This document shows positions 420-46,419 of a stretch of DNA of 46,419 bases, one piece after another (position 1 is the first letter of the stretch; the number at the start of each line of letters is the position of its first letter). The notes beneath the pieces are model-generated. The model was not told the origin of the DNA and did no database searches. It worked only from the letters and a program-made list of their open reading frames with translations. The stretch comes from Chiloscyllium plagiosum (Eukaryota). The DNA is taken from positions 8,332,704 through 8,379,122 of the forward strand of contig NC_057728.1 in the NCBI RefSeq assembly GCF_004010195.1. The letters run 5' to 3'. Both the position numbers and the translations under genes were made by a program.

Positions 420-3178
420 CAATTCCCGCCACACGTTCCCCGACTTCCGCCACCATCGCGGCCGCTTCCGCAGCCACTTCCGCCCCAATGACTCCACCCA
501 CACCACGCGTTTTGTCACTTCTGCCCCATGTCATCAATGACATCACGTGTTCTGTGACTTCTGCCACTCCTCTACTGCTGTTGTTGCCACCACTTCTGCC
601 CTCACCAACACAACTTACCTGCACACTGCCAGCACGCCTCCCACGGATCCCACTGTCTCTATCCCTGCCCCCCCAGAACCCTGAGGGGAACACCATCTCT
701 GCAAATGGCTCCAAACCCATTCCCCCAGTCACAGTCTCCGCCCCCACTCCCAGCTCCACACCTATGCAAGGTCCTATGTCCCAGCCCTGCTGGGTTTTCA
801 CCATCCCCCCAGACCTCCCCCTCACTGAGGACGAACGATCAGTCCTCAGCAAAGGCCTTACTTTCATCCACCCTGCCCACGCATCAACAAATTCAGTACA
901 CGTTGTGATGTCGAACACTTCTTCTGCTGCCTCCGCCTCTGAGCTTGCTTTTTCCATCATGACTCCCACCTACTTCCGAGGGCTCCTTCACTCGCCTTCA
1001 ACACACTCCATCCACCTGGACACCCCGTGATGGCCTATTACCTGGCCTCGATCTCTTCATTTCAAACTGCTGCCGGGACATTAACCGCCTCAACCTGTCT
1101 ACCCCCCTCCCCCACTCCAACCTCTCACCCTCACAACGCGCAGCCCTCCACTCCCTCTACTCCAATCCCGACCTCACTATCAAACCAGCGGATAAAGGGG
1201 GTGCAGTGGTAGTTTGGCTGAAGCCAGACGCCAACTCAAAGACACCTCCTCCTACCGCCCCCTCAACCATGACCTCACCTCCCATTACCAAACCATCATC
1301 TCCCAGACCATACACAAACTCATCACCTCAGGGGATCTCCTACCCACAACTTCCAACCTCCTAGTTCAGGAACCCCGCACCGCCTGATTCTACCTCCTTC
1401 CCAAGATCTACAAACCTGACTGCCCCACCCAACCCATTGTCCCAGCCAGCTCCTGCCCCACTGGACTCATCTCCACCTACATTGATACTGTCCTATCCCC
1501 CGGTCCAGGAACTTCCGACATATGTTCGGGACACCGCCCACTCCCGCCTCCTTCTCCATGACATCCGTTTCCCTGGCCCCCAACGCCTCATCTTCACCAT
1601 GGACACCCTGTCCCTCTACACCTCTATCCGCCATGACTAGGGCCTCCAAGCCCTCTGTTTCTTCCTATCCCGATATCCCCACTAGTACTCTTCCACTGAC
1701 ACTCTCATTTGTTTGGTTGAACTGGTCCTCACCCTCAACGATTTGTCTTTCAAATCCTCCCACTTCCTCCAGATGAAAGTGGTAACTATGGGCACCCGCA
1801 CGGGCCCCAGCTATGCCTGTCTCTTTGTTGGCAATGTAGAACATTCTATCTTATGTAGTTACACTGGCACCACTCCTCACCTTTTCCTCCTCTACGTTCA
1901 TGACTGCATCAGCGCCACCTCGTGCTCCCACGAGGACGTTGAGAAGTTCATCAATTTCATCAACACATTCCACCCTGACCTTAAATTCACATTGACCATC
2001 TCTGACACCTCCCTCCCCATCCTAGACCTCTCCATCTCCAAAAACGACGACCGACTCAACACTGACATTTTTTACAAACCTACTGACTCCCACAGCTCCC
2101 TGGATTACACCTCCTCCCACTCTACCTCCTGCAAAAATGCTATCCCATATTCCCAATTCCTCCGCCTCCGCCGTATCTGCTCCCAGGAGGACCAGTTCCA
2201 CCACAGAACACACTAGATGGCCTCCTTCTTTAAAGATTGTAATTTCCCCTCCCACGTGGTTGAAGATTCCTTCCAACGCACCTCCGCCCTCAAACTCCAC
2301 CCCACCAACCTCCACATAAACCACACCATCTGCCGACATTTCTGCCACCTACAAACGGACCCCACCACCGGGGATATATTTCCCTCCCACCCATATCCGC
2401 TTTCTGCAAAGACCGTTCCCTTCATGACGACCTGGTCAAGTCCACGCCCCCCAACAACCCACAGTCCCCTCCTGGCACCTTCCCCTGCCACCGCACAAAT
2501 TGCAAAACCTGCGCCCACACCTCCTCCCTCACCTCCATCCAAGATCCCAGAGGAGCCTTTTACATCCATCAAAGTTTCATCTGCACATCCACCAATGTCA
2601 TTTATTGTATCCCTTGCTCCCGATGCAGTCTCCTCTACATTAGGGAGACTGGACGCCTCCTCGCAGAGCACTTAAGGGAACATCTCTGTGACACCCGCAC
2701 CAATCAACTCCACCGCCCTGTGGCCGAACTTTTCAACTTCCCCTCCCACTTTGCCAAAGAACGCCTCATCTTCCACCGCGGAACCCTTCAACCCCAGGGT
2801 ATCAATGTGGACTTCAGTTTCCTCATTTCACCTCCCCGACCTTACCCCAGTTCCAAACTTCCAGCTCAGCACCGTCCTCATGACCTGTCCCGCCTGTCAA
2901 TCTTCCTTCCCACCTCTCCGCTCCACCCTCCTCTCTGACCTATTACTTTTATCCTTTCCTCCATCCACCTATTGCACTCTCAGCTACCTTCCAACCATCC
3001 CCACCCCCTCCCATTTATCTTTCCACCCCCGGGACTTCCAGCCTCATTCCTGATGAAGGACTCCTGCCCGAAACTTCGATTTTCCTGCTCTTTGGATGCT
3101 GCCTGACCTGCTGTTCATTTCCAGCACCACTCTAATCTTGACATTAGTCTCCAGCATCTACAGTCCTCACATTCGCCT
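420..3178 (+). mobile_element. Degenerate Penelope-like retroelement (Neptune-like): RT, GIY-YIG endonuclease and 3' pLTR
   Basis: Frameshifted RT motifs (FYLLPKIYKP, MDTLSLYTSI, MGTRTGPSYACLF, YVHDCI~YIDD, YKPTD, AIPYSQFLRLRRICS); GIY-YIG-like NVIYCIPC..C..LYI near 2594; C-terminal LIF..GTLQPQGIN; hammerhead-like pLTR at 3046. Boundaries approximate. Confidence 0.85.
3046..3081 (+). ncRNA. Degenerate minimal hammerhead ribozyme in PLE pLTR
   Basis: attc CTGATGA a ggac tcct gccc GAAAC ttc gatt; stem II mismatch and GTC>TTC, so probably inactive. Confidence 0.6.
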
Positions 3179-3180
3179 GG

Positions 3181-3341
3181 GAGCTTAACCACACCCATTC
3201 AGGCTGCTTCTACTGTTCCAAAAAAAAACTCAAGGCTTTACATGTTGTTTACCTTCTCATGGACTGATTGGCATTGGTCTCCCATCTCTTTTTAAAAGAA
3301 ACCAGGACGAAATAACTTTTTGAAGCCACAGCATTGTCACA
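3181..3341 (-). mobile_element. Fragment of the LTR-like repeat also present at 28040-28673
   Basis: ccacacccattcaggctgcttctactgttcc...aagccacagcattgtcaca aligns by eye to 28506-28673. Confidence 0.6.
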
Positions 3342-3976
3342 ATCCTGCTCCACAGTGAAAATTGCTTCACTGTATCTTGGTTTAAATTAATGTTTGTGCC
3401 AACAGGAGAATCACTCATGAAAAGATTCGTTCGACATGAATTTCTTTAAAGTGGAAGCAAAGTCACAGGGTAGTTTGAACTTTTTGTTTGAAAGTATTCC
3501 CTCTTCTTCTAGTGAGAAAACAAACCTCCCGGGGGTGGGGGGGGTGGGTGAGGGGGATAACCATTCGGTACTCTGCTGTCATGCTAACAATTTGTTATTA
3601 GCTGTATCTGCGAGTTTTCGATGCGGTTCTGCATATCGACCATTAAACTATTGTATGCTTGCTCAGTGTTGATGACTGAACTTGAAACTGCCGATCAGCT
3701 TGCTTTGAGTCAGACATCAAAACTTTATGCTTTACGCAGTAGAACTAGTTGACTGAAATATCATTCTGGAGTTTGATGGACTGGTGAAGGGTGTAGGTTG
3801 TGTCAACAATAAATTGGAATTGAACTTTGACTGCATTGGAGTTTGGCTCCAACCTGCCATAAGCTCACCTTGGCAAGTCAGTTAAGAATCTCGGCTTTAC
3901 TCTACAAAAATTGTACTTGTGACTGTCGATGAATTGTACTTGTGACTGTCTTTCTGCATCTGTCTGTCTTTTCTAG

Positions 3977-4645: not shown

Positions 4646-4805
4646 CATAAAAGCAAAATATTGAGGATGCTGGAAATCTGAAAAAGAAAACCGAAAGTGT
4701 TGGAGAAACTCAGCAGATCTGGCAGCGTGTGGAGAGAGAAAAACAGTTAACATTTTGAGTCCAATATGATTTCTTCGAGAGAGACTCCAGCACTTTCTGT
4801 TGCCT
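4646..4805 (-). mobile_element. Old PLE pLTR-derived short element with decayed hammerhead region
   Basis: ggatgctggaaatctgaa...aaactcagcagatctggcagc...gttaacattttgagtcc; same family as 6040-6138 and 32445-32540. Confidence 0.55.
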
Positions 4806-5545: not shown

Positions 5546-6267
5546 AATTTAAAAAAAAGAAAGAGCAGGGGTAAGGTCTTTGGGGTGCAGTGGTAGACAA
5601 CAGATATGGTATATACCTGTAAAACCCTACTTATCTGTCTCTCATTACTTGAACAGCAATGTTAAATTTGATAATATCTAATCACTGGCACTGTTCTAGA
5701 ATCGAAGGAATTTTGGAAAATCATAACCAATGTTTCCAATATCTTTGCAACTACTTATTTTAAACCATCGGGCTGGGTACTGGGATTTGTTGGATTTATT
5801 CCTGAAAGTTTCTCCAACACTTGTTGTCTGCATTAAGCTCTTTTCTTTTGTTAGCCCTCTTGGTTGCCTTTTTATTTATTCAATGTCTCACACTTTCCTC
5901 ATTCCCCTTAATCATTTATTCTGTTTGACTCTAAAGGATTCCTATTTACTTTAGCTACTCTCCTCCTTTTCATATACTTATAACAGCTGTTACAATATAT
6001 TTTTTATCTTCTTTTAATCTAGCGTTAACCTTAATTTCAAACAAAACCAGGGGTTGCCGGAGAAACTCAGCAGGTCTGGCAGGATTTGTGGAGAGATAAC
6101 AAAGTTAACATTTTGAGTCCAGTCACCCCAAAGACATCTGTAGTGTTTGGAAGGAGGTTGGCCAGGTGGATCTCATGGAGTATGAGTTCTCTGATTGGGG
6201 CAGGTAAGATAGACCAATCAGGGAGTCCTGGCGGACAGATATAAACAGGAGTCGGAGCCCAGGTGTC

Positions 6268-7445
6268 GTAGAGGCATAGAGTCATAGAGATGTACATCAT
6301 GGAAACAGACCCTTTGGTCCAACCCGTCCATGCCGACCAGATATCCCAACCCAATCTAGTCCCACTTGCCAGCACCCAGCCCATATCCCTCCAAACCCTT
6401 CCTATTCATATACCCATCCAAATGCCTCTTAAATGTTGCAATTGTACCTGCCTCCACCACATCCTCTGGCAGCTCATTCCATACATGTACCACCCTCTGC
6501 GTGAAAAGGTTGCCCCTTAGGTCTCTTTTATATCTTTCCCCTCTCACCCATAGAGGGAACTATGCCCTCTAGTTCTGGACTCACCAATCCCCGGGAAAAG
6601 GCTTTGGCCGATTTACCCTACCCATGCCCCTCATAATTTTGTAAACCTCTATAAGGTCACCCCTCAGCCTCCGATGCTGCAGGGAAAACTGCCCCAACCT
6701 GTTCAGCCTCTCCCTATAGCTCAAATCCTCCAACCCTTGTAAATCTTTTCTGAACCTTTTCAAGTTTCACAACATCTTTCCGATAGAAAGGAGACATGCA
6801 ATTCTGATTGCATGCAATATTCCAAGAGTGGCCTAATCAATGTCCTGTACAGCCGCAACATGACCTCCCAACTCCTGTACTCAATACTCTGACCAATAAA
6901 GGAAAGCATATCAAACGCCTTCTTCACTATCCTATCTACCTCCACTCTCAAGCCGCTATGAACCTGCACTCCAAGGTCTCTTTGTTCAGCAACCTTACCA
7001 TTATGTGTATAAGTCCTGTTAAGATTTGCTTTCCCAAAATGCAGCACTTCACATTTATCTGAATTAAACTCCATCTGCCACTTCTCAGCCCATTGGCCCA
7101 TCTGGTCCAGATCCTGTTGTAATCTGAGGTAACCCTCTTTGCTGTCTACTACACCTCCAATTTTGGTGTCATCTGCAAACTTACTAACTGTACCTCTTCT
7201 GCTTGCATCCAAATCATTTATGTAAATGACAAAAAGTAGAGGACCCAGCACCAATCCTTGTGGCACTCCATTGGTCACAGGCCTCCACTCTGAAAAACAA
7301 CCCTCCACCCCACCCTCTGTCTTCTACCTTTGAGCCAGTTCTATATCCAAATGGCTAGTTCTCCCTGTATTTCATGAGATCTAACCTTGCTAATCAGTCT
7401 CCCATGGGGAACCTTGTCGAACGTCTTACTGAAGTCCATATAGAT
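6268..7445 (-). mobile_element. 5'-truncated CR1-clade LINE (HER1-like)
   Basis: [57 protein letters not shown]; ctctatga-type 3' tail repeat. Confidence 0.93.
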
Positions 7446-8333
7446 CCTGGGAGAAAGAGCATGCCCTCCAAATTTTCAGGGAGAGGTGGGCACTGCAGGG
7501 AGTGGAGTGTACTATTTCCCCTCCAACTCTATTTTGATTTAATCCCTGCCTTCCCCTTCACTGTTTGATCACACAGCATTGCCCTTTGATGTGAAGGGCA
7601 CTGCTTGTCACTGGCCACTCGGGTGTTTCATTTCTTCCTGGTGGTGGAATTTGAAAAACCATTCATGCACCTTGTGTCTTTCAGTGTGTCTCGCATCTGC
7701 ACACACACAACATGGGGGCTGGGGAAAAAAAATAAACAGAAGTCAGAGCCCAGGTGTCCTTGGTGAAAGAGCATGCGGTGTCCACCAACACCCTCAAGAT
7801 TTTTAGGGAGAGGTGGGCACCACAGGGAGTGGAGTGTATTATTTCCCCCTCCAATTCTATTTTGATTTAATCCCTACCCTTCCCTTCACTGTTTGACCAC
7901 ACAGCATTGCCCTTTGATGTGAAGGGCACTGCTTGTCACTGGCCACTCGGGTGTTTCCTTTCTTCCTGGTGGTGGAAATTGAGTAAAGATTTGTGCACCT
8001 CGTGTCTTTCGCTGTCTCTCACACCTGCACACACACAACATGGGTGCTGGGAAAAAATACAAGAGAAAAATAAATAAACAGGAGTCAGAGCCTGGATGAC
8101 CTTGGAGCAGGAGCATGCGGTTTCCACCAGCACCCTCAAGAATTTCAGGGAAAGGTGGGCACCTCAGGGAGTGGAGTGTATTATTCCCCCCGCAGCTCTA
8201 TTTTGATTTAATCCCTGCCCCCCCCGGAAATTTAATAAAGATTGGTACACCTGTTGTCTATCACTGTGTCTCAAAAAATATATATATAACCAGATTAGAA
8301 CTGTTCCAGTTGAGGACTGAGGAAAATAAACAA
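7446..8333 (+). mobile_element. Tandem 3' ends of a Tx1/L1-like LINE (3 units; unit 1 begins at 6254 and is split by CR1)
   Basis: Unit 2 (7745-8073) reads RAQVSLVKEHAVSTNTLKIFRERWAPQGVECIISPSNSILI*, then a 3' UTR and A-rich tail; unit 3 conserves the peptide; Tx1 assignment from a recalled ORF2 C-terminus. Confidence 0.7.
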
Positions 8334-10575: not shown

Positions 10576-10589
10576 GTCTCCTGACAATA

Positions 10590-19592: not shown

Positions 19593-19594
19593 AG

Positions 19595-19949: not shown

Positions 19950-21006
19950 AACAACCCCAACCTCACCATCAAATCAGTAGACAAGGGTGGGCAGCGGTGC
20001 GCAGTTGTAGTTTGGTGCACCCCGACTTCTACATCACTGAATCCACGGACAGCTCCTCCTACTGCCCACTCGATCACAACCTCACCTCCCATCACCAAAC
20101 TATCATCTCCCTGACCATCAGCTCAGGGGATTTCCTATCCACAGTCTCCAACCTCAGAGTCTGGGAAACCTGCACCGCCCGGTTCCCCCTCTTACCCAAA
20201 ATGCACAAACTGCACACCCATTCAACCCATTGTCTCCGCCTGCTCCTGCCCCACCGAAATTAATTCTGCGTACCTTGATGCCATCCTGTCCCTCTGGACC
20301 AGGATCTTCCCACATTTGTTTGAGACACCACCCACACCCTCCACCTTTTGGTTAGCTGCCCCCAGTGCCTCATCTTCAACATCCATTCACCATGACGAAG
20401 GCCTCCAAGCCTTCCATCTCTTCTTTTCACGCCAACCCAAGCAGTACCCTTCCACATGTCACCTACTGTGTCCATTGCTCTCGATTGGTCTCCTTTACAC
20501 TGGGGAGACAGGACGTCAACTTGCGGAACGTTTCAGAGAACATCTCAGGGACACACACACTAAACAATCCCACTGCCCGAACACTTCAACTCCCCCTCCC
20601 ACTCCTCCATGGAGGTCCTGGGACTTCTCCATCACCAATCCCTAACCACCCCACGTCTGGAGAAAGAACACCTTATCTTCTGCCCTGCGACCCTCCAACC
20701 ACATGGGATCAATGCTGATTTCACCGGTTTCGTCACTTTCCCTCCCCTCATCTTATACCAGATTCAATTTTCCGACTTGGCACTGCCCTTTTGAACTGTC
20801 CTACCTGTCCATCTTCCTTCTTACCTATCTGCTACACCCTCCTCTCCGACCTATCACCATCACCCCCAACTTCATCAACCGCATTCCCAGATACATTCCC
20901 ACCAGCCCCACCCCCTTCACATTTATCTCTCAGCCCCCTTGGGCCACTCCCACACTTCTGATGAAGAGCTTATGCTCGAAACATCAATTCTCCTGCTCCT
21001 CGGATG
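19950..21006 (+). mobile_element. Internally deleted Neptune-like PLE
   Basis: RFPLLPKMHK, VTYCVHCSR / LLYTGETGRQLAERFREH (GIY-YIG), LIFCPATLQPHGIN; pLTR with hammerhead at 20958. Confidence 0.85.
20954..20989 (+). ncRNA. Minimal hammerhead ribozyme motif with compensatory stem II
   Basis: CTGATGA a GAGC ttat GCTC GAAAC ATC; stem II is GAGC/GCTC versus GGGC/GCCC in other copies. Confidence 0.65.
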
Positions 21007-27400: not shown

Positions 27401-27470
27401 CTTGCATTTCAATGTGTAAGACAAAATCTTTTGAGTTTTTTTGTCCCTTCTTGGGAACATTCACCTTCTG

Positions 27471-27564
27471 AGCTTAAAAATGTGTTGCTGGAAAAGCGCA
27501 GCAGGTCAGGCAGCATCCAAGGAGAAGGAGAATCGATGTTTCGGGCATAAGCCCTTCTTCAGGA
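27471..27564 (-). mobile_element. 94-nt PLE pLTR-only insertion containing a hammerhead motif
   Basis: Perfect 12-bp TSD attcaccttctg (27459-27470 and 27565-27576); reverse complement CTGAAGA a GGGC ttat GCCC GAAAC ATC. Confidence 0.85.
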
Positions 27565-28039
27565 ATTCACCTTCTGTACAATTAAGTATTTAATCAGGAA
27601 ATGCTTGGTGGATTGCTAGGAAATTTCTCTGGAGCTCTCTCGATTAGCCACTGGAATTTTGACCACAATTCCACTTCTATAGCTTATCCTGGTTCTCCAC
27701 TTATTCCTCCGCTCCGATACTGATAATTGATGCCTCTCACCAGCCACCATCGCTTCTACCAGCAGGAAGATCTCTCCTTACTCATCTTGAATTTTAAGCC
27801 CTGACTTTCAAACATCCTCCATTTGCTGTGTCAAATCTATATCTGTCTGACAGTCTCCCCTCTTATGGACTCAGATCTGCGCTGCCTGTTCACTGAATTT
27901 CTGTCTGTGGCCAACATTGCTGCCCTCGGTGCTGAGTTAATGGAAAGTACAGGTGAAGCTTTATTGATTGATTTGAAAATCAGTGTCATTGTGGAGAAAT
28001 GAGGATGGTCGTTTTGCTGCACATCGTGCAATTGCCCTT

Positions 28040-32444: not shown

Positions 32445-32760
32445 AAAATGTCAGAAACTCTGGATAAATTCATCAGGCCGGGCAGCATCTGTGGAGAGAA
32501 AGACACAGCCAATGTTTCAGGTGGATCACCTGTCTTCAGGTCCAAAAGGTGTCGGTCACTCAGAGCCATGGAACAGGCCGGGAGGTTCCGGGAAAGAGCA
32601 CTGGAAAGAGGGCTGAAATAGCGTGGAATCTGGAAGTGACTGAGACACAACATTGCAAGACAAAAGGAGATGAGAAAGCAAGTTTGTCAACAAAATATGG
32701 GCCCAGAAGAGGTTACAGAGTCATAGCAGAGAGGGAGGATCTGAACAAAATAAGAAGGCT
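32445..32760 (-). mobile_element. Old PLE 3' end with hammerhead remnant (32508-32540)
   Basis: Reverse complement CTGAAGA c AGGTG atc CACCT GAAAC ATT...ctctccacagatgctgcc. Confidence 0.6.
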
Positions 32761-34672: not shown

Positions 34673-34675
34673 GAC

Positions 34676-37916: not shown

Positions 37917-38382
37917 AGGGTGTAGGTTTGCTCGCTGAGCTGTAGGTTTGATATCCAGACATTTCATTACCTGGCTAGGTAACATTGTCAGTGGCGACCT
38001 CCAAGTGAAGCGAGGCTGTTGTCTCCTGCTTTCTATTTATATGTTTGTCCTGGATGGGGTTCCTGGGGTTTGTGGTGATGTCATTTCCTGTTTGTTTTCT
38101 GAGGGATTGATAGATGGTATCTAGATCTATGTGTTTGTTTATGGCGTTGTGGTTGGAGTGCCAGGCCTCTAGGAATTCTCTGGCATGTCTTTGCTTAGCC
38201 TGTCCCAGGATAGATGTGTTGTCCCAGTCGAAATGGTGTTTTTTTCCATCCGTGTATAGGGCTACGAGGGAGAGAGGGTCGTGTCTTTTTGTGGCTAGCT
38301 GGTGTTCGTGTATCCTGGTGGCTAACTTTCTTCCTGTTTGTCCTACGTAGTGTTTGTGGCAGTCCTTGCATGGAATTTTGTA
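37917..38382 (-). mobile_element. Penelope/Poseidon-type PLE 3' fragment (GIY-YIG) with mutated hammerhead at 37955-37994
   Basis: YKIPCKDCHKHYVGQTGRKLATRIHEH; near-identical to 42517-42962; core CTGACAA...GAAATGTC. Confidence 0.9.
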
Positions 38383-38810
38383 GTTATAAACAACCTTTGT
38401 TAAACCCCATTTAGAGTACTGTGAGCAGATCTGGGCACCACACCTTAGGAAAGATAGATTGGGCAATGAATAGGAAGGGTTGAGGGGGATATGGGCCAAA
38501 TGCTGGCAAATGGGACGAGATTCATTTAGAATATCTGGTCGGCATGGACAAGTTAGACCAAAGGGTCTGTTTCCGTGCTATGCATCTCTATGACTCTATT
38601 GGCATGACCTCTTTGAATGGTGGAACAGGATCAAGGGGCTGAATAGTCTGCTCCTGTTCCTATATTCATGTGTGAAAGGAGGAGCAGATAAAGACAGGAA
38701 AGGAAAAGAAGATTGGGAGGAGGCTTCAGTAGATTGTAAGCACTATGGTGGACCAGTTGGGTTTGTGTTATAAACTCTCTCTAATTTGTCTTGTGCTGCA
38801 TTTATTGTAG

Positions 38811-38938
38811 GATGTCCATTTGGTTCAATGGCACTTTGGAGATTCGGGATCTGTCTAAGGCCGATGAGGGAGTCTATACCTGTTTTGCAGAGAACAACAG
38901 GGGAAAGGCTAACAGCAGTGGCACTTTAACAGTGACCG
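38811..38938 (+). CDS. CNTN1: Contactin exon, Ig5: MSIWFNGTLEIRDLSKADEGVYTCFAENNRGKANSSGTLTVT
   Basis: ttgtag acceptor, G|gtaagg donor; 128 nt, phase 2/1; YTCFAENNRGKANS matches CNTN1 as recalled. Confidence 0.95.
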
Positions 38939-39897
38939 GTAAGGGAGCAAAGCTTTGCCACAGAGTTATTTTAAACTGCCATTTTTAACTGAAGACTTTG
39001 GATCTCTTATTTTCAATTAAAAAATGTTCCTGAATATCTTTCCCTGGAAACCTAATTCTTTTCACGTCTGCCAAGTAATATTGCATCATCCAGTTTATCC
39101 CCTCGAGCTAGCTTTTAATAAAAGGACTAGATTGGTACAAGCGTAGTTCATGAAAGGGTTTGGTAATCTGCTACTTTCTGATGCATAACTCCCAATGTAA
39201 AATTAAATTGGTTCAAAACTGGATTGAAGCTCCTGGAGATCATAAGCACAGTTCAGTGTAAAATTTGAAGTGAACCCAACAGAGTAAAGACCAACTTCTT
39301 AACTTAAAAAAACCCTGGCTTAAATTTACAGTCATGATCCCCCTGTCCTAGGCTTCCCGATGAGCAGAAAAGGTTTCCTTTTATTTACCCTGTCAATGCT
39401 TTTCAAGATTCTCCATGCCACAGTAAATTCATCCCTATCCCAGCTAATACAAACCTAGTTTATGTGATCTCTCCTCAGAGTTGCACTCATGGATTTCTGT
39501 GAACATTTTTGTCATTCTGTGTTCCTTCTGGTATACAAAGATCATTGTCCAACCTGACTGCCACATCTCAGTTATAGTCCAAGGAGGATTTTGTATAGCT
39601 GTAATGGTATTTCCATCCCCTTTATACACTTTTGAATACAAATAAAATCTACTAAACTAATTAGCTAATTGTACCAAAAAAACAAATTTAAGTTTATATT
39701 AGAATGTTGCTTCAGTGGGAGATCATGGACTCCAGCCCCTGTGATGCAAAGCCAGACATGCACCAGTGGGCACCATGTCATCCTCTTTCAAGGTCATCTG
39801 GGCACAAACATAATATTGAAGTGAGGCAGGTACTTGGGTCTAACAACCCCAAGCATAGCCCGCTGTTTGAACCCGTTATTTGCCCCACTAGTTATCC

Positions 39898-40133
39898 AGA
39901 TTAGAATAGTGCTGGAAAAGCACAGCAGGTCAGGCAGCATCAGAGGAGCAGGAAAATCGATGTTCCAGGCAAAAGCCCTTCATCAGGAATGGCTTCGTCG
40001 GATTCCTGATGAAGGGCTTTTGCCTGAAACGTCGATTTTCCTGCTCCTCGGATGCTGCCTGAACTGCTGTGCTTTTCCAACACCACTCTAATCTAGACTC
40101 TGATCTCCAGCATCTGCAGTGCACACTTTCTGC
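39898..40133. mobile_element. Palindromic head-to-head PLE pLTR element with two hammerhead motifs
   Basis: 93-bp arms 39898-39990 and 40002-40094 (7 mismatches), 11-nt spacer, candidate TSD agttatcca/agtgatcca. Confidence 0.85.
40002..40037 (+). ncRNA. Minimal hammerhead ribozyme motif, core intact
   Basis: attc CTGATGA a GGGC tttt GCCT GAAAC GTC gatt. Confidence 0.7.
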
Positions 40134-40899
40134 GAGTGATCCAAACTAACGTTCCATTTTGGTTACTTCCAGAAATTAATTTGAACTTGAACTAGTTGGT
40201 TTATCCTCTGATATTTGCGATCTTACTCATCTCTCTGTTGAGACTCTTGTAATGCCTTATTTCAAGGCTTTCTTCATATCTCATTCCGCTGACATTATTA
40301 ATTAGACTCTGGGCTCTTTTGATCAGCTTAAATAGCGCCCCCTGTGGTTTATTAATGCAAAGGCTCAAGGCAAGAACATTGCAATTTAGTTATGACCTCA
40401 GAAAAAGCTAATCATTTCACCAGATTGTCCATTAAATCCAGAAGAATCCAAATTTAGCGATCTCCGATCGAGTAACCTGTGCTGAAGAGCAAAGTAGATT
40501 CCTGATCCAGGTTAATGAAGACATTTTTGGAAAAACCTTACATGTTGAGCAATAAGGAAGTGAAAGAAGTCAGATGTATATTTAGATCAGTGCTCATAGC
40601 ACTCGCACAATTTGTTTCTTCTGTTAGAAGTGGCAAACCTATTCTTCCTTGATAAATCATCTCCAGCTATCCCACTTCTCATCACATTATTCAGATAATT
40701 TTTTCTCAACACTTCTTCCTCTTCACTAACCCTCCTTTCATTTAGATTCTTCTGCCCTTTCTCCAAAACCACAGCTAATTGTCCCCTAATCCCATTTATA
40801 CAAAATAGGGGGACTAGCTACACCACCTCCATGTGAGAGTTTAGCAACTTGATGTATTTCCTGACCTTTGCAACAATTATGAGAAACTGTGGACTGGAC

Positions 40900-41570
40900 A
40901 AAAATCTGATATTAGCTCAATTGCCTGATGTGCACCTTCTAACGTGCGTGAAGTCCGTTTCATCCATCACCCCTGTTCCCTCTGATCTACATTGCCATCC
41001 AGTCCACCAAAACCTTGGTTTTAATATCCTCACCTCGGTATTGAACACTGTCTACCTTTCCATATCTCACTGATCTTCTCCAGCCACTCAACCCTTGGAG
41101 AACTCTGCATTCCTCAAATATGCACAATTCCCTTTGGTCCACATTGACAGTTGAGTCTGCAGTCAAGATTAGAGTGGTGCTGGAAAAGCACAGCAGGTCA
41201 GGCAGCATCCGAGGAGCAGGAAAAATCAACGTTTCAGGAATGATGAAGGGCTTTTGCCCGAAATGTCAATTTTTCCTGTTCCTTGGATGCAGCCTAACCT
41301 GTTGTGCTTTTCCAGCACCACTCTCATCGTGACTCTGATCGCCAGCATCTGCAGTACTCACTTCCACCCAGTTAAGTCTGCAGCCATTTGATCCTGAGCT
41401 GTGGAACTCTCTCCTTAATCTTCTCTTTCCTCTTCAATATTCTGCTTAGAATCTGTCTCTCTCATCAGGCTTTCTGTTGTGAACCCTCATATCGCTTTCC
41501 TTGGCTTATTATCAATTTGTCTTCAATTACATCTCTGTAAAGCGCTTTGACATGTCTCCTAGACACAAAA
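40900..41570 (+). mobile_element. Degenerate L2 LINE 3' region (hosts the palindrome at 41163-41368)
   Basis: ITPVPSDLHCHPVHQNLGFNIL resembles L2 ITPVL..LHWLPV..RI.FKIL; tail tgtaaagcgctttga. Confidence 0.6.
41163..41368. mobile_element. Second palindromic PLE pLTR element
   Basis: Arms ~41161-41235 and 41260-41334 around a damaged hammerhead core (atgatgaagggcttttgcccgaaatgtc); 15-bp TSD cagtt(g/a)agtctgcag at 41148-41162 and 41369-41383. Confidence 0.85.
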
Positions 41571-42087
41571 TACATGCCATTTGTTGTTGATGTCATTTTG
41601 CCAGTACTAACTGAGTTTCTTTGGCTTTTACCATGTGATAATTTCAAAGTCACATCCTCCCTTGCTGATGCAGTGTAATGCTACACAAGCAAGCAACATA
41701 ATCCAGACGTTGGTCAAGATCCTGTGAAATGGGAGTTAGTGTGGACGGAACAATTTTGTGTAACTGCATACTTTACAGGATAGGAACTTTACTTGGGAGC
41801 AACAAGAGAGCTTTTTCAGCGCAGCATTAGTTATTGGAGTAGATGATTAAAATTAATATTTTAAAAAGCCCATGAGGAGTAAGGAGTTTGTTTGAAAACC
41901 TTTACAAACTAGCTGCCAGCACCCACAGTGTCCCATCAGCTTTCATGTTTTGTCTCCCATTTGAACACAAAGTACACATGGCTTACAGTTCCACATTCTT
42001 CTTTGGCTCATGCTTTTTGGAAAGTTTTCAAGATGTTTAGATGTTGTAAATATGTTGGTTTTACATTTCTTCTTTTTGTCCTTACAG

Positions 42088-42263
42088 AACCCACCAGAAT
42101 CACTCTTGAGCCATCGAACATTGATATTACTGTAGGGGAAAATGGCACGATGGAGTGCCATGCATCTCATGATCCCATCCTGGACCTGTCATTAGTCTGG
42201 TCAACAAATGGTTATACCATTGACTTTGAGAAAGAGAAAGACTACATGGAACGCAGGATAGAG
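42088..42263 (+). CDS. CNTN1: Contactin exon, Ig6: EPTRITLEPSNIDITVGENGTMECHASHDPILDLSLVWSTNGYTIDFEKEKDYMERRIE
   Basis: ccttacag acceptor, GAG|gtaagt donor; 176 nt, phase 1/0; DITVGEN and NGY.IDF motifs. Confidence 0.95.
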
Positions 42264-42533
42264 GTAAGTGTCCAGAGGTAAAGGTCATTAAAATGTCCTT
42301 GTCACGTGCTGATCTAGGTTATTTTCATTGAACAACATTCTCATCACAGGTTATCACTGCAATCATCAATCAAATCAACTACCTTCCATTTAATGTCAGA
42401 CCACAGAACACTAATGTTTGCATAATTACAATATGTACCCAGACTCAATGGCAATACCTAGACTGGTGTTAATTTCCTGAAGGAATCAGAAATTTAGCAG
42501 AGTTCTATTATCTCTTGGGTGTCGGTTTGATAT

Positions 42534-42573
42534 CCAGACGTTTCATTACCTGGCTAGGTAACATCATCAGTGG
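42534..42573 (-). ncRNA. Intact minimal type I hammerhead ribozyme
   Basis: Reverse complement: cca CTGATGA t GTTACCT agcc AGGTAAT GAAAC GTC tgg; stem I cca/tgg, 7-bp stem II, palindromic ACGU stem III, GUC site. Confidence 0.8.
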
Positions 42574-43224
42574 CGACCTCCAAGTGAAGCGAAGCTGTTG
42601 TCTCCTGCTTTCTATTTATATGTTTGTCCTGGATGGGGTTCCTGGGGTTTGTGGTGATGTCATTTCCTGTTTGTTTTTTGAGGGATTGATAGATGGTATC
42701 TAGATCTATGTGTTTGTTTATGGCGTTGTGGTTGGAGTGCCAGGCCTCTAGGAATTCTCTGGCATGTCTTTGCTTAGCCTGTCCCAGGATAGATGTTTGT
42801 CCCAGTCGAAATGGTGTTTTTTTTCCCTCCGTGTGTAGGGCTACGAGGGAGAGAGGGTCGTGTCTTTTTGTGGCTAGCTGGTGTTCGTGTATCCTGGTGG
42901 CTAACTTTCTTCCTGTTTGTCCTACGTAGTGTTTGTGGCAGTCCTTGCATGGAATTTTGTAGATAACGTTGGTTTTATCCATGGGTTGTACTGGGTCTTT
43001 TAAGTTTGTTAGCTTTTGTTTGAGAGTGTTGGTGGGTTTGTGTGCTACTAGGATTCCCAGGGGTCTTAGTAGTCTGGCTGTCATTTCTGAAACTTCGTTG
43101 ATGCATGGTAAGGTGGTTAGGGTTTCTGGCTGTGTTGGTCTGCTTGTCGTGGTTTGTTCTTGAGGAATCTGCGAACCACCTATACAACGTATTCAAGAAG
43201 AACGGATACTCAAAAAAATACAGT

Positions 43225-43591
43225 NNNNNNNNNNNNNNNNNNNNNNNNNNNNNNNNNNNNNNNNNNNNNNNNNNNNNNNNNNNNNNNNNNNNNNNNNNNN
43301 NNNNNNNNNNNNNNNNNNNNNNNNNNNNNNNNNNNNNNNNNNNNNNNNNNNNNNNNNNNNNNNNNNNNNNNNNNNNNNNNNNNNNNNNNNNNNNNNNNNN
43401 NNNNNNNNNNNNNNNNNNNNNNNNNNNNNNNNNNNNNNNNNNNNNNNNNNNNNNNNNNNNNNNNNNNNNNNNNNNNNNNNNNNNNNNNNNNNNNNNNNNN
43501 NNNNNNNNNNNNNNNNNNNNNNNNNNNNNNNNNNNNNNNNNNNNNNNNNNNNNNNNNNNNNNNNNNNNNNNNNNNNNNNNNNNNNNNNNNN
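43225..43591. other. Assembly gap (367 N)
   Basis: Run of n. Confidence 0.99.
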
Positions 43592-44489
43592 TTCTTTCGA
43601 CTGTGACGTCCAGGAATGCGAGTTTGTTGTCGGTTTCTTCCTCCTTGGTGAACTTTATGCCTGTGAGGGTGTTGTTGATGATGTTAAATGTCTCTTCTAT
43701 CTTGTTTCATTTTGTGATGACAAAGGTGTTATCTACGTAGCGGACCCAGATTTTTGGTTTGATGGTTGGTAGGGCTGTTTGTTTTAGTCTTTGCATTACC
43801 GCTTCTGCTATGAATCCTGATAGCATGGGTGATCCCATGGGTGTGCCATTGGTTTGTTTGTAGACTATGTTGTTGAAGGTGAAGTGGGTGGTAAGGCACA
43901 GGTCCACTAGCTTCATGATGTTTTTGTTGGTACTGTGATTGGTGGTTGGTGTGTGTGTGATGCTCTCTTCTAAAAGTGTGGTAAGTGTTTCCTTTGCCAG
44001 GTCGCTTTTGATGGAAGTGAACAGTGCTATTACGTCGAATGAGATCATTGTTTCATCTTCCTCTATTTTGGTGTTTTTGATGATTTTTAGGAATTCCTGG
44101 GTGGAGTGGATGGAGTGTTGTGACTCTTCTACTAGGTACTTCAGTCTTGCGTGTAGTTCTTTGGCCAGTCTGTAAGTTGGTGTTCCGGGTAGTGAGACTA
44201 TGGGTCTGAGGGGGGCTCCTGATTTATGGATTTTTGGTAGTCTGTAGAATCGTGGGGTGTTGGTCCCATCTGATTTCATTTTCTGGAATTCCGTCTTGTT
44301 TAATTGTCCAGAATTGTGTAATTTTTTTAGGAGATATGTAATTTTGTTTCCGAATTGTGGGGTTGGGTCTAGCGCCACCTGTTGGTAGGTGTTGGTGTCT
44401 GCGAGTAGTACATTGGCTTTCTCTATGTAGTCCCTTCTGTTCAGGATGACTGTGAGCCGACCTTTGTCTATTATCTCTTTTTTTGGCTT

Positions 44490-45772
44490 GAGAACATGGA
44501 ACATTACAGCACAGTATAGGCACTTTGGCCCTCCATGTTGCACCAACCCATGAAACCAATCTAAAGCCCATCTAACCTACACTATTCCATTATCATCAAA
44601 ATGTTTATCCAATGACCATTTAAATGCCCTTAAAGTTGGCAAGTCCACTACTGTTGCAGGCGGGGTGTTCTACTCCCCTATTACTCTCTGAGTAAAGAAC
44701 CTACCTCTAACATCTGTCCCATATCTATGACCCTGAAATTTAAAGCTATGTCCCCTCATGCTAGCCATCACCATCTGAGGAAAAAGGTTCTCACTGTCCA
44801 CACTATCTAAACCTCTGATCATCTTATATGCCTCTATTAAATCACCTCTTAACCTTCTTCTCACTTAACGAAAACAGCCTCAAGTCCCTCAGCCTTTCCT
44901 CATAAGACCTTCCCTCCATACCAGGCAACATCCTGGTAAATCTCCTTTACACCCTTTCCAATGCTTCCACATTCTTGATATAATGCGGCGACCAGAACTG
45001 TATGCCATACTCCAAGTGCGGCCGCACTAGAGTTTTGTACAGCTGCAGCATGATCCCATGGCTCCAAAGCTCAATCCCTCTACCAATAAAAGCTAACACA
45101 CCGTACACCACCTTAACAACCCTATCAATTGGGGTGGCAACTTTTAGGCATCTCTGCTCATCTACACTACCAAGAATCTTGCCATTAGCCCAGGACTCTT
45201 TATTCATGTTACTCCTTCCAACGTGAATCATCTCATACTTCTCCGCATTAAACTCCATTTGCCACCTCTCAATCCAGCTCTGCTGCTTATCTATGTCCCT
45301 CTGTAACCTGCAATATCCTTCAGCACTGTCCACCCACCTTAGTGTCATCTGCAGATTTACTAACCCATCCTTCTGTGCCCTCATCCAGGTCATTTATAAA
45401 AATGACAAACAGCAGTGGCCCCAAAACAGATCTTTATGGTACACCACTAGTAACTGAACTCCAGGATGAACATTACCCATCAACCACCACCCTCTATCTT
45501 CTTTCAGCTAGCCAATTTCTGATTCAAACTGCTAAATCACCTTCAATCCCATGCCTCCGTATTTTCTGCAATAGCCGGCCATGGGGAGTCTTACCAAATG
45601 CCTTACTGAAAGTCACATGCACCCCATCAACTGCTTTACTGTCATCCACCTGTTTGGTCACCATCTTAAAGAACTCTGTAAGATTTGTGAGGCAAGACCT
45701 ACCCTTCACAAAACCGTGTTGACTATCCCTAATCAAATTATTCCTTTCTAGATGATTTATGTATCCCATCTC
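44490..45772 (-). mobile_element. CR1 LINE (second subfamily), 5'-truncated
   Basis: QHGFVKGRSCLTNLTEFF, FSKAF, WQMEFNAEK, LYKTLVRPHLEY, LRGDLIEAYKMIRG; atgttct-type tail. Confidence 0.92.
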
Positions 45773-46204
45773 TTAGGTTTTGTTTGATTTTGTCAGGTGT
45801 CCCACAATGTGACATGGTAGTTGGGGAAAATTCTGGCTAGGATGTTCCACAGGTCATGTTTTCCTGCCTGTAGTCATGGATAAAATGAACGAGAAATTGT
45901 TTTCTGACAGTAAGCTAATGTTTTGCAAAGATGGTTTAGGTCCATTTTCTACTTCTCTAATTTACACATTGCTCTACATTTCCTTGTGTCCACCACTGTT
46001 TCTGTTGTTTGAATGGATATTTGGAAAGGGAATTTTTCCCAGACGAGATTTGAGTCCATTTGGCAAGATAAATAGTATACAAGTGACATCAGCACTCCTC
46101 TCCCTTCCTGTAGTTGCTGCAGCCTCCAATATCCAAGTCCCACTTGCCCATGGTGGGACATAACTGTGGTCCCTTCATTTAGAAATCCTTCCTTTGACAG
46201 ATTC

Positions 46205-46419
46205 AGCAGCTGAAACTTTATTGTTGGAACAGCACAGCAGGTCAGGCAGCATCTAGGGAACAGAAGATTCGACGTTTCGGGCACATGCCCTTCTTCAGGA
46301 ATGAGCAGAGAGTGTTCAGCAGGAGAAGATAAAAGGTAGGGAGGAGGGACTTGGAGGAGGGGCGTTGGAAATGTGATAGGTGGAAAGAGGTCAAGGTGAG
46401 GGTAATAGGTCGGAGTAGG
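46205..46419 (-). mobile_element. 3' end (pLTR) of a Neptune-like PLE running off the window edge
   Basis: Reverse complement matches 2925-3125 (ctccgaccta...attcctga...gatgctgcctgacctgctg). Confidence 0.8.
46267..46302 (-). ncRNA. Intact minimal type I hammerhead ribozyme
   Basis: Reverse complement: attc CTGAAGA a GGGC atgt GCCC GAAAC GTC gaat; perfect stem I attc/gaat, 4-bp stem II, GUC site. Confidence 0.8.

What the first reader, a model, noticed from the sequence alone, without database searches (positions are those of the whole stretch)
3046..46302. About 10 hammerhead ribozyme motifs from at least three PLE families, with covarying stem II, inside contactin introns
Seen: the pattern CTGAWGA + 1 nt + hairpin + GAAAC(G)TC, or a 1-2-mutation derivative, occurs at 3046(+), 20954(+), 27531(-), 32508(-), 37955(-), 39955(-), 40002(+), 41236(+), 42534(-) and 46267(-). 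Stem II changes sequence but keeps pairing: GGGC/GCCC, GAGC/GCTC, AGGTG/CACCT, GTTACCT/AGGTAAT. Stem I also differs while pairing (attc/gaat; cca/tgg). Established: PLE pLTRs carry minimal type I hammerheads whose loopless palindromic stem III (here ACGU) requires dimerisation. Inference: shark genomes may hold a very large, mostly unannotated pool of such ribozymes; most copies here are damaged at the ACGT CpG. I cannot tell whether these shark families are already described.
Basis: partly seen in the sequence, partly recalled or inferred. Interest (0 to 1): 0.8.

Follow-up and report, generated by a model that had tools for sequence, protein, structure and literature searches.

The report
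Penelope retroelement hammerhead motifs in shark
The window holds about ten copies, most of them mutated, of the small hammerhead-ribozyme motif that Penelope-like retrotransposons are known to carry at their ends, here scattered through the introns of a shark contactin gene, so it is a correct call of a known kind of element, not a new one.

Summary
All 10 sites carry the motif CUGANGA + 1 unpaired nt + helix II + GAAA(CGUC), or a decayed form. Of the 10, 7 match the exact pattern (8 hits against 0.86 expected). Six meet a stricter structural descriptor (0.063 expected). Only 3 keep every core letter (46298-, 42570-, 40006+), and two of those have G.U at pair 10.1-11.1.

The carriers are Penelope-like elements (PLEs). 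Family C (- strand, 42511-44546) has an RT ORF with 211 homologues and a GIY-YIG ORF whose stop codon lies in loop II of the motif. Family A has decayed RT and EN remains upstream of 3050. Family B is tied to A only by 3'-end similarity. Short copies show PLE insertion marks: target-site duplications, head-to-head inverted pairs and a one-sided 34-35-nt tail.

Minimal, probably dimeric hammerheads in PLE repeats are published (PMC4209133). No Rfam hammerhead model matches. RNA reads show no ends at the cut site, so cleavage is unproven.

First readers of this scan noted the same thing on other DNA of this genome: 153 notes. Verdict: new member of a known kind, modest interest.

The parts
46267..46302 (-). 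Family A hammerhead motif. It is the only copy with all core letters, G-C at pair 10.1-11.1, ACGUC and a 4-bp helix I.
40002..40037 (+). Family A motif with an intact core and ACGUC, but G.U at pair 10.1-11.1. It forms the right arm of inverted pair 1.
   Evidence: Reads from other copies carry C at 40025 (114/280 and 236/279).
39955..39990 (-). Family A motif, decayed (GGAAC, ACAUC, G.U). It forms the left arm of inverted pair 1.
   Evidence: Reads from other copies restore 39965 and 39967.
41236..41271 (+). Family A motif, decayed (C3 changed to A, GAAAU, position 1.1 G changed to A). It forms the right arm of inverted pair 2.
41162..41240 (-). Left arm of inverted pair 2. It is a family A 3' end truncated inside helix II of the motif.
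   Evidence: (I16)
27531..27566 (-). Family A motif (ACAUC). It sits in a 94-nt insertion (27471-27564) flanked by a perfect 12-bp target duplication (27459-27470 and 27565-27576).
3046..3081 (+). Family A motif (one helix II mismatch, ACUUC) at the 3' end of a decayed PLE.
1214..3174 (+). Decayed family A PLE body and 3' end. RT-like similarity lies at 1214-1462, EN-like similarity at 2522-2719, and the motif plus tail run to 3174.
   Evidence: tblastn 33%, E=1.4e-5; 49%, E=7e-7; 45%, E=6e-8; D7
20954..20989 (+). Family A motif with compensated helix II (GAGC/GCUC) and U-A at helix I pair 2.1-1.1 (ACAUC). It lies downstream of a GIY-YIG-like ORF at 20316-20645.
32507..32543 (-). Family B motif with a 5-bp helix II, a 3-nt loop and ACAUU.
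42533..42574 (-). Family C motif with an intact core and ACGUC, a 7-bp helix II and G.U at pair 10.1-11.1. The EN ORF's stop codon TAG lies in loop II. A9, the unpaired U and G10.1 spell AUG.
42511..44546 (-). 5'-truncated family C PLE. The RT ORF is at 43707-44546, followed by an in-frame stop, and the frame continues to 43593. Then come the N gap at 43225-43591 and the GIY-YIG ORF at 42554-43084. The element ends about 15-26 nt after the cut site.
   Evidence: (D1, D18)
37954..37995 (-). Family C motif, decayed (CUGACAA, GAAAU). It sits in a second 3' fragment of the same PLE (37932-38499, 97-98% identical).
   Evidence: RNA reads from other copies restore all three letters.
39895..40134 (.). 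Inverted pair 1. Two family A 3' ends lie head to head (arms 39895-39990 and 40002-40097, 92% complementary), with a one-sided tail of about 34-37 nt (from 40098; many reads part from the window after 40131). A candidate 9-bp target duplication lies at 39890-39898 and 40135-40143 (8 of 9 identical).
   Evidence: (I8)
41163..41369 (.). Inverted pair 2 (arms 41161-41238 and 41257-41334, 86% complementary) with a one-sided 35-nt tail (41335-41369). The 14-bp target duplication lies at 41149-41162 and 41370-41383 (13 of 14 identical).
   Evidence: (I16)
4696..4739 (-). Relic of a related 3' end (tail box). The motif upstream is decayed beyond recognition. Similar relics lie at 6053-6113 and 28712-28749.
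   Evidence: D8; E=0.0012, 0.003, 0.0078

Best explanation
The ten sites are copies of the minimal type I hammerhead motif that sits in the terminal (pseudo-LTR, 3'-end) region of endonuclease-bearing Penelope-like retrotransposons.

Three shark PLE lineages are present. Family A has 7 motif copies plus one truncated arm. Family B has 1 copy and is a distant relative of A. Family C has 2 copies and is young, at 97-98% identity between them.

The copies reached the contactin introns by target-primed reverse transcription. That process starts at the element's 3' end and usually stops early. It explains why most copies are only the last 94-240 nt (motif plus tail). It also explains why two are head-to-head inverted pairs, with both DNA ends extended as shown in vitro for the Anolis Poseidon element, and why a 34-35-nt tail sits on one side only.

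Shown here: the motif, its pairing, the coding remains, the insertion marks, and that RNA-seq reads from other genomic copies carry the intact core.

Inferred from published work: in a transcript with two motifs, or between two RNAs, the palindromic ACGU of two motifs pairs to form helix III. Each motif can then cut after GUC, slowly. In this window only 46298- is fully canonical. 42570- and 40006+ are borderline, and the other seven are dead relics, mostly through CpG decay.
For: Motif excess over chance: 8 against 0.86 and 6 against 0.063.

Architecture as published for PLE minimal hammerheads: an unpaired nt after A9 in 10/10 copies, helix II of 4-7 bp, a short helix I and a loopless ACGU (PMC4209133).

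Helix II differs entirely between families yet pairs 4/4, 5/5 and 7/7. Within family A, 85.7% of cells are paired against 8.9-53.6% when the 3' partner is slid. There are 3 double changes, and 5 of 500 shuffles reach the observed covariation score.

Family C coding. The RT ORF has 211 homologues at E<=1e-5. The best are sharks at 59-77% identity, and one is named telomerase reverse transcriptase-like. Their Pfam domains are RVT_1, DUF8422 and HTH_animal. The EN ORF has GIY-YIG as its best Pfam family (E=0.0018), and 19 of 30 Atlas hits are sets that carry GIY-YIG. The ORF shows the run VIY...C-x2-C-H-x-H...YVGQTGR.

Family A has RT-like and EN-like similarity in the same order upstream of 3050.

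Insertion marks: target duplications, inverted 5'-truncated pairs and a one-sided tail, which match PMC8557442 and PMC11167929.

The AUG at the start of helix II and a cut site 25 nt after it mirror the Anolis Poseidon element (PMC11167929).

RNA reads of organism B restore the core letters at 37986 (23/23 and 6/6), 37987 (23/23 and 5/6), 37961 (20/34 and 8/8) and 40025 (114/280 and 236/279).
Against: No Rfam hammerhead model matches. This holds at gathering score, at E<=10 on the whole window, and at E<=10 on 101-nt stretches around the two best copies.

Raw RNA reads show no place where many molecules begin or end (table 6 'none'). The run is poly(A) single-cell data, and only about 2 in 100 of it was read.

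Helix I is 0-4 bp, and the family A majority form has only 2 contiguous pairs. Two of the three 'intact' copies have G.U at 10.1-11.1.

No second same-strand motif lies near any intact copy, so there is no partner for a dimer. No tandem pseudo-LTR arrangement is seen in the window.

Minimum-energy folds of monomers and homodimers do not give the hammerhead fold. The 40006+ copy would be locked in a 96-bp hairpin (-157.6 kcal/mol, z=-23.5).

The Pfam GIY-YIG scores are below the curated cut-off (19 against 22.6 bits).

Published work found low activity for such motifs even as dimers (PMC4209133). It also found that catalytic mutants did not affect insertion in vitro and that no reads ended at the cut site (PMC11167929).
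Confidence: 0.85

Rival explanations
1. The motif is kept by PLEs for a purpose other than self-cleavage. For example, it could be a structured RNA signal around the ORF stop/start that the element's own protein or the ribosome recognises. The hammerhead likeness would then be ancestral and catalysis irrelevant in sharks.
For: In family C the motif overlaps the ORF stop (loop II) and an AUG at the start of helix II. No read ends lie at the cut site. Helix I is weak, and G.U sits at 10.1-11.1 in the young family C. PMC11167929 reports that catalytic mutants did not affect insertion in vitro. [quoted passage not shown]
Against: The letters kept are exactly the catalytic core in three otherwise unalignable helix II contexts. 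Reads from other copies restore the core letters, not other letters. PAc core mutants C3G and G8C abolished cleavage, and the double mutant partly restored it (PMC11167929).
Confidence: 0.25
2. The short family A units (94-240 nt) are not merely 5'-truncated PLE copies. They would be a non-autonomous, separately transcribed element (SINE-like or retrozyme-like) that starts at the hammerhead and borrows the PLE machinery through the shared tail.
For: Three of 3 short insertion events in the window have their 5' end or inversion point at or inside the motif: 27564, both arms of pair 1 at the helix I start, and pair 2 inside the motif. At 40002, 210 reads of X19 run on into unlike sequence with low agreement (0.46). 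These repeats are covered very deeply in contig runs. The preprint 10.64898/2026.07.22.740005 argues that animal retrozymes derive from PLE pseudo-LTRs and finds them in its one chondrichthyan genome. An earlier unchecked note, s1-885836, says the same of another window.
Against: There are only three events here. No tandem direct repeats of the unit are seen, and those define retrozymes. Long copies (3050+, 20958+, 46298-) continue upstream of the motif into PLE sequence. Every read from another copy must part from the reference at 40002 whatever its own boundary, so the loose ends are not decisive. PMC4209133 already attributes single motifs to truncated PLEs.
Confidence: 0.2
3. The motif is a chance resemblance inside an unrelated SINE or fold-back (MITE-like) repeat.
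For: No Rfam hammerhead hit. Two copies are palindromic insertions with target duplications, which looks like a fold-back transposon. The palindrome scores as a microRNA-like hairpin below threshold.
Against: The same core with a paired helix II occurs in three repeat families with different helix II sequences, against 0.063 expected hits. Two of the families carry RT and GIY-YIG remains upstream on the same strand. The inverted pairs have a one-sided tail and their outer ends are 3' ends, as described for PLEs (PMC8557442).
Confidence: 0.03

Closest known systems
Minimal hammerheads (min-HHR) of metazoan Penelope-like elements (Cervera and de la Pena 2014, PMC4209133)
   Same: Type I order of parts. 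CUGANGA and GAAA core. One unpaired nt at the 5' end of helix II. Helix II up to 7 bp. Short helix I. No helix III loop, so a dimer is required. Most copies are single, some lie close together on opposite strands, and only a few sit next to a full PLE.
   Different: Shark families are not named in the main text: 0 occurrences of 'shark' or 'Callorhinchus'. The supplements are closed. Family A has a helix II of only 4 bp, shorter than the 7-8 bp described for Schistosoma.
Hammerhead of the Poseidon element PAc of Anolis carolinensis (Frangieh et al. 2024, PMC11167929)
   Same: In family C an AUG sits at the start of helix II and the cut site lies 25 nt after it; the paper gives 26 bp. The insertion ends in an A/C-rich stretch soon after. 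The insertion has a one-sided tail. No RNA-seq reads end at the cut site, in their data or in mine.
   Different: I could not see a full-length family C copy, so it is not shown that the AUG opens the ORF. What is shown is that the upstream ORF's stop codon lies in loop II. Clade membership (Poseidon against Neptune) was not tested by a tree.
Non-LTR retrozymes of animals (Cervera and de la Pena 2020, PMC7229834, abstract only; Li et al. 2026 preprint 10.64898/2026.07.22.740005)
   Same: Short non-coding units with a type I hammerhead, related to PLE pseudo-LTRs, and reported in one chondrichthyan genome.
   Different: Retrozymes are tandem direct repeats. No tandem unit with the motif occurs in this window. 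The preprint reports exclusion from introns, whereas all copies here are intronic.
Rfam hammerhead families (types I, II, III, HH9, HH10; names recalled, not printed by a call)
   Same: The same catalytic core letters.
   Different: No match at any threshold tried. The probable reason is that the motif has no closed helix III and only a very short helix I.

Membership tests
Hammerhead ribozyme, minimal PLE type | Core letters C3-U4-G5-A6-N7-G8-A9 and G12-A13-A14 | tested here: met
   Both boxes are intact in 7 of 10 copies. The other three have CUGACAA (37991-), GGA (39986-) and C3 changed to A (41240+).
Hammerhead ribozyme, minimal PLE type | A15.1-U16.1 and a cleavable H17 (here ACGUC) | tested here: met
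   ACGUC is intact in 3 of 10 copies (46298-, 40006+, 42570-). Six of the 7 others differ by a CpG transition.
Hammerhead ribozyme, minimal PLE type | Helix II paired, with pairing kept while the sequence changes | tested here: met
   Nine of 10 copies are fully paired and one has 3/4. There are three unrelated helix II sequences of 4, 5 and 7 bp. Within family A there is one G-C to A-U double change, one break and two G.U. Helix II has 96.4% of cells paired.
Hammerhead ribozyme, minimal PLE type | Helix I formed by the flanks | tested here: inconclusive
   Contiguous pairs are 4, 2, 2, 2, 2, 2, 0, 1, 3, 3. In family A helix I has 75% of cells paired, and one column pair is unpaired in 5 of 7 copies.
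Hammerhead ribozyme, minimal PLE type | One unpaired nt between A9 and helix II, and a loopless palindromic helix III (dimer needed) | tested here: met
   The unpaired nt is present in 10/10 copies. The palindrome ACGU without a loop is present in the 3 intact copies. The feature is as described in PMC4209133 and PMC6765202.
Hammerhead ribozyme, minimal PLE type | Self-cleavage after H17 | not testable with these tools
   The only indirect test was RNA reads, which show no pile-up of ends (table 6). Power was low: poly(A) single-cell library, about 2 in 100 of the run read.
Rfam hammerhead covariance models | Score at or above gathering, or any match at E<=10 | tested here: not met
   Searches list no hammerhead family.
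Penelope-like element (EN+) | Reverse transcriptase of the PLE/telomerase-like kind | tested here: met
   Family C ORF 43707-44546 has 211 homologues at E<=1e-5. Their domains are RVT_1, DUF8422 and HTH_animal, and one is named telomerase reverse transcriptase-like. Atlas hits are the same families at 0.96. The local Pfam copy gave no RT hit. No tree with reference PLEs was made.
Penelope-like element (EN+) | C-terminal GIY-YIG endonuclease by Pfam's own threshold | tested here: inconclusive
   GIY-YIG is the best family for 3 ORFs, but all are below the cut-off of 22.6 bits: 19 bits (E=0.0018), 16.5 bits (E=0.011) and 14.6 bits (E=0.043). Nineteen of 30 Atlas hits are sets that carry GIY-YIG.
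Penelope-like element (EN+) | GIY...YIG with the internal C-C-H-H motif, downstream of RT on the same strand | tested here: met
   Read directly in the translation of 42554-43084. The order RT then EN is colinear with shark homologues on both sides of the N gap. The motif is said to be universal in PLE endonucleases except Chlamys and Hydra (PMC8557442).
Penelope-like element (EN+) | Partial tandem giving pseudo-LTRs | tested here: inconclusive
   No direct repeat of a motif-bearing end flanks an ORF in the window. Both coding copies are 5'-truncated or decayed, so the feature could not show.
Penelope-like element (EN+) | Inverted 5'-truncated copies and a 30-40-bp tail at one end only | tested here: met
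   Two inverted pairs (I8, I16) have one-sided tails of about 34-37 nt and 35 nt. The feature is as described in PMC8557442 and PMC11167929.
Non-LTR retrozyme | Tandem direct repeats of a unit with one hammerhead each | tested here: not met
   The repeat finder shows no tandem direct copies of the motif-bearing unit.

The most novel reading that the evidence does not exclude
In this shark the hammerhead is more than a passenger of PLE ends. An RNA that begins at the first base of helix I and ends at the tail would be the preferred template of a very abundant class of 94-240-nt mini-retroelements. These insert singly or as twin-primed fold-backs. Each fold-back places a ~96-bp perfect hairpin (a possible small-RNA precursor) in a host intron. 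The ribozyme motif would then define the 5' boundary of a mobile unit, which is not its published role (cutting after GUC).
Probability: 0.25. Interest if true: 0.55.

Novelty: new member of a known kind. Interest (0 to 1): 0.3.

Why it matters
It gives a checked example that shark Penelope-like elements carry the same minimal, dimer-type hammerhead as those of flatworms, bony fishes, coelacanth and frogs. It also shows that such motifs are a large unlabelled part of shark introns that Rfam-based annotation misses completely.

This is useful for repeat and ncRNA annotation of chondrichthyan genomes, and it offers a source of natural helix II and helix I variants. It does not open a new question, because the kind of element, its architecture and the doubts about its activity are all in print.

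The one point that might repay work is why short copies and inversion points begin at the motif.

Tried and rejected
Rfam. The gathering scan gave 0 hits. The E<=10 scan gave no hammerhead; the best match was mir-4529 on the palindrome at 38.8 bits against a gathering score of 88, which I reject as a generic hairpin match. Two 101-nt scans gave only chance hits, snoU82P and ST7-OT3_4.

More copies for an unbiased covariation test. I scanned metagenome contigs for the 19-nt tail box. It returned 48 loci, and 0 of 48 have the element upstream. All look like chance matches in mostly GC-rich contigs. That route is dead.

As a result no full-length copy, no tandem pseudo-LTR and no genome-wide alignment could be examined.

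Local Pfam gave no RT family for the RT ORFs, even at E<=10. The RT call rests on homologues and the Atlas.

Thermodynamic folding of monomers and homodimers does not recover the hammerhead fold. I do not count this against the motif, because nearest-neighbour energies do not model the core, and I do not count it for the motif either.

MAFFT misaligned families B and C to family A. The pair counts were therefore made on family A alone (7 of the 10 copies) and the other three copies were read by hand.

A short-peptide search for the putative N-terminus that starts at the AUG in the family C motif found nothing meaningful among the 120 listed homologues.

Literature. 'hammerhead ribozyme' + 'shark' returned 22 papers; none of the 20 listed concerns shark genomes by title. 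'Penelope' + 'shark' + 'transposable elements' + 'elasmobranch' returned 3 papers, and the whale-shark paper only lists Penelope among LINEs. Lunse, Weinberg and Breaker (PMC5785218) is not held; I know it only from its citation in PMC6765202. Supplements of PMC4209133, which may list more species, are closed.

Rejected readings: a type III reading of the motif (no helix I hairpin upstream; my reading), and a SINE/MITE origin (see rivals).

Full report
THE GAP FIRST. The window has one run of N, at 43225-43591. None of the ten motifs is near it: the closest (42533-42574) is 650 nt away. Each motif is a self-contained stretch of 36-42 nt, so the finding does not depend on continuity across the gap.

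The gap does lie inside one carrier element, the family C Penelope-like element. I tested colinearity without touching the N's. Five shark and metagenome homologues (P0007, P0017, P0087, P0086, P0045) align to the - strand on both sides of the gap. They run up to 43593 on one side and resume at 43111-43135 on the other, leaving 87-106 residues unmatched. Both sides therefore belong to one copy, in the same order and on the same strand. The DNA distance (about 460 nt, including 367 N and 92 unaligned real bases) is roughly 200 nt longer than the homologues predict. It is also not a multiple of three, so the nominal gap length is probably too long and the frame cannot be judged.

THE OBSERVATION. 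All ten places hold the motif, or a derivative of it, on the stated strand. The pattern CTGAWGA-N6-36-GAAAC occurs 8 times against 0.86 expected, and 0 of 100 shuffles reach 8. Seven of the 8 hits are reader sites. The eighth (32437-32476) has no helix II and is chance. A stricter descriptor of my own (core, 0-1 unpaired nt, helix II of at least 4 bp, loop 3-8, GAAA) finds 6 hits, all reader sites and all with exactly one unpaired nt, against a mean of 0.063 and a maximum of 1 in 300 shuffles.

Reading each copy position by position:
- Three copies keep every core letter and ACGUC: 46298-, 40006+ and 42570-.
- Of those three, 40006+ and 42570- have G.U, not G-C, at pair 10.1-11.1.
- Helix II is fully paired in 9 of 10 copies.
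- Helix I is poor: 0-4 contiguous pairs, and only 2 in the majority family A form.

WHAT CARRIES THE MOTIFS. The ORF list shows two long ORFs on the - strand just upstream of the 42570 motif.

The first, 43707-44546 (279 aa), has 211 homologues at E<=1e-5. The best are from the sharks Stegostoma tigrinum (72-77% identity), Chiloscyllium punctatum and Hemiscyllium ocellatum. One is annotated 'telomerase reverse transcriptase-like'. Their precomputed domains are RVT_1, DUF8422 and HTH_animal. The Atlas gives the same families at 0.96.

The second, 42554-43084 (176 aa), has GIY-YIG as its best Pfam family, below the curated cut-off (19 against 22.6 bits). Nineteen of 30 Atlas hits are sets that carry GIY-YIG. 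Its translation shows a GIY...YIG pair with C-x2-C-H-x-H between the two halves. That matches the internal CCHH motif which Craig et al. describe for PLE endonucleases other than Chlamys and Hydra (PMC8557442, passages). RT followed by a C-terminal GIY-YIG endonuclease is the defining layout of EN+ PLEs (same paper).

The ORF's last codons run through CUGAUGA, and its stop codon TAG is the first part of loop II. A second fragment of the same family (37932-38499, 97-98% identical; D1 and D18) carries the decayed 37991 motif.

For family A, local tblastn finds RT-like similarity at 1214-1462 (33%, E=1.4e-5) and EN-like similarity at 2522-2719 (45-49%, E=6e-8 to 7e-7). These lie on the + strand, in that order, upstream of the 3050 motif. 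The 20958 motif follows another GIY-YIG-like ORF (E=0.011). Family B (32539) is joined to family A only by an nhmmer match of its motif plus tail to the family A profile (E=1.8e-4). Three further relics match the tail alone (E=0.0012-0.0078). 'At least three PLE families' is therefore right for A and C and indirect for B.

HOW THE COPIES GOT THERE. The short copies carry PLE insertion marks.
- The 27562 copy is a 94-nt insertion (27471-27564) between perfect 12-bp target duplications.
- Two insertions are head-to-head inverted pairs whose outer ends are element 3' ends. Pair 1 has arms 39895-39990 and 40002-40097, 92% complementary. Pair 2 has arms 41161-41238 and 41257-41334, 86% complementary. 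Pair 2 has a 14-bp duplication (13 of 14 identical) and pair 1 has a 9-bp candidate (8 of 9).
- In both pairs one arm alone runs on for a further 34-37 nt (pair 1) or 35 nt (pair 2).

Inverted 5'-truncated copies, and a 30-40-bp 'tail' present at one end only, are described as PLE hallmarks (PMC8557442). [quoted passage not shown]

COMPARISON WITH PRINT. Cervera and de la Pena (PMC4209133, passages) defined minimal hammerheads without helix III. They found them in the terminal repeats of all PLEs they examined. [quoted passage not shown] Every one of these points fits the window.

[quoted passage not shown] In family C, A9, the unpaired U and G10.1 spell AUG, and the cut site lies 25 nt after it. 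I could not see a full-length copy, so whether that AUG opens the ORF is inference.

Sharks are not named in the main text of PMC4209133, and its supplements are closed. A 2026 preprint finds non-LTR retrozymes in its one chondrichthyan genome and derives them from PLE pseudo-LTRs (abstract and passages). The whale-shark genome paper lists Penelope among its repeats (one passage).

COVARIATION. Between families, helix II is three unrelated sequences of 4, 5 and 7 bp, all paired. Within family A I used 7 of the 10 copies, because MAFFT could not place B and C. The named structure has 85.7% of cells paired, against 8.9-53.6% when the 3' partners are slid by 1-3 columns. It has 3 pairs with a change on both sides. 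Five of 500 shuffles reach the observed covariation score, and 19 of 500 reach the count of double changes. Two of the three double changes are in one copy (20958: G-C to A-U in helix II and C-G to U-A in helix I). There is also one break and one G.U event shared by the two arms of pair 1. With seven related copies this is suggestive only.

RNA EVIDENCE. The run search found four runs of unrecorded kind, from organism B, that hold half or more of the stretch's words. It found no run on record as RNA that holds the stretch, and it listed two raw poly(A) single-cell RNA runs of the same species label. I laid 37800-43224 on X19, X20, X2 and X1 at 90% likeness.
- X20 gave nothing.
- X19 gave 2,697 reads, of which 96 in 100 run on into unlike sequence. 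They therefore come from other genomic copies.
- Depth is high and equal on both strands over the family A pairs.
- Over family C, depth is 2-8 times higher for 'first mate on +'. By the tool's note this suggests RNA of the - strand, the element's sense strand. I hold this loosely for a single-cell library.
- No place is reported where many molecules begin or end, so there is no sign of cleavage. The library type and the 2-in-100 sampling make this a weak negative. It matches the negative result reported for Anolis.
- Reads from other copies carry the intact core where the window copy is mutated: 37986 (23/23 and 6/6), 37987 (23/23 and 5/6), 37961 (20/34 and 8/8), and 40025, which restores G-C at 10.1-11.1 (114/280 and 236/279).
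- A 7,759-nt contig of X1 (another species) joins 38809-38936 to 42087-42263. X1 is therefore RNA, and the 39955-41271 sites are intronic.
- Two exons searched singly match contactin-1 best (E=1.1e-34, residues 147-213; E=3.6e-21, residues 481-538). The host gene is a contactin on the + strand.

WHAT SPEAKS AGAINST ACTIVITY HERE.
- No Rfam hammerhead model matches at any setting.
- Helix I is marginal.
- No intact copy has a same-strand partner nearby for a dimer.
- The only near-intact sense-strand copy (40006+) would be buried in a 96-bp hairpin (-157.6 kcal/mol, z=-23.5).
- The two best copies (42570-, 46298-) are antisense to the host gene.
- Energy folding does not yield the hammerhead fold.

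VERDICT. It is the known PLE minimal hammerhead, in shark families that I could not find described by name. First readers of this scan have noted it many times on other DNA of this genome (153 of 998 notes mention hammerheads; unchecked). Catalysis is unproven, and for most copies it is excluded by mutation. The one loose thread is that all three short insertion events in the window begin or invert at the motif itself. Plain 5' truncation does not predict that, and cleavage after GUC does not explain it.

Noticed in passing
window 43707-44546 (-): After sharks (59-77% identity), the closest relatives of the family C reverse transcriptase are dozens of proteins from tapeworms and flukes (Sparganum, Spirometra, Dicrocoelium, Trichobilharzia) at about 40-49% identity. 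No other vertebrates appear among the 120 proteins listed. This may only reflect which genomes are annotated and the length filter of the search. A parasite-host link was not tested.
   Followed up: no
window 39895-40097 and 41161-41334: The two inverted PLE-end pairs would fold as near-perfect hairpins if transcribed with the intron (203 nt, -157.6 kcal/mol, z=-23.5). Rfam's mir-4529 model matches the first at 38.8 bits, below its gathering score of 88. They are possible sources of small RNAs.
   Followed up: partly
window 43105-43740: The assembly gap sits inside a PLE copy. The homologues predict about 88 residues between the flanks, roughly 200 nt less than the nominal distance. One homologue (P0017, residues 245-278) also gives a weak hit on the opposite strand at 43108-43209 (E=6.8e-4). 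This hints at an inverted PLE piece next to the gap, the kind of structure said to break assemblies (PMC8557442).
   Followed up: partly
window 43707-43709 (-): There is a single in-frame stop in the family C reverse transcriptase. Homologues align straight through it to 43593, so this young-looking copy is already dead.
   Followed up: partly
window 3095-3113, 27499-27517, 32471-32489, 39923-39941, 40051-40069, 41191-41209, 41286-41304, 46235-46253, and relics 4711-4729, 6068-6086, 28723-28741: A 19-nt box about 20 nt downstream of the motif is better kept than the motif itself, across family A, family B and three older relic families (D8, 12, 37). It may be the part of the RNA that the element's protein recognises.
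   Followed up: partly
window 38809-38936 and 42087-42263: A 7,759-nt contig from an RNA run of another species (organism A) joins these two stretches with 1-2 differences. This marks two contactin exons and shows very high exon conservation between the two sharks (table 8).
   Followed up: partly
window 6760-7308 (-), 20970-21784 (-), 44947-45393 (-): ORFs with LINE-type reverse transcriptase motifs (my reading). They form repeat families D2, D4 and D14. One abuts and cuts short the tail of the 20958 PLE copy at about 21012.
   Followed up: no
window 35688-35906 and 36046-36264: Two 219-nt direct copies are 100% identical and 358 nt apart (D6). Such identity is unusual among the decayed repeats of this window. 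It could be a recent duplication or an assembly artefact.
   Followed up: no
window 7464-8225: Three tandem units of about 330-340 nt at 71-86% identity (D3, D12). No hammerhead motif was found in them.
   Followed up: no
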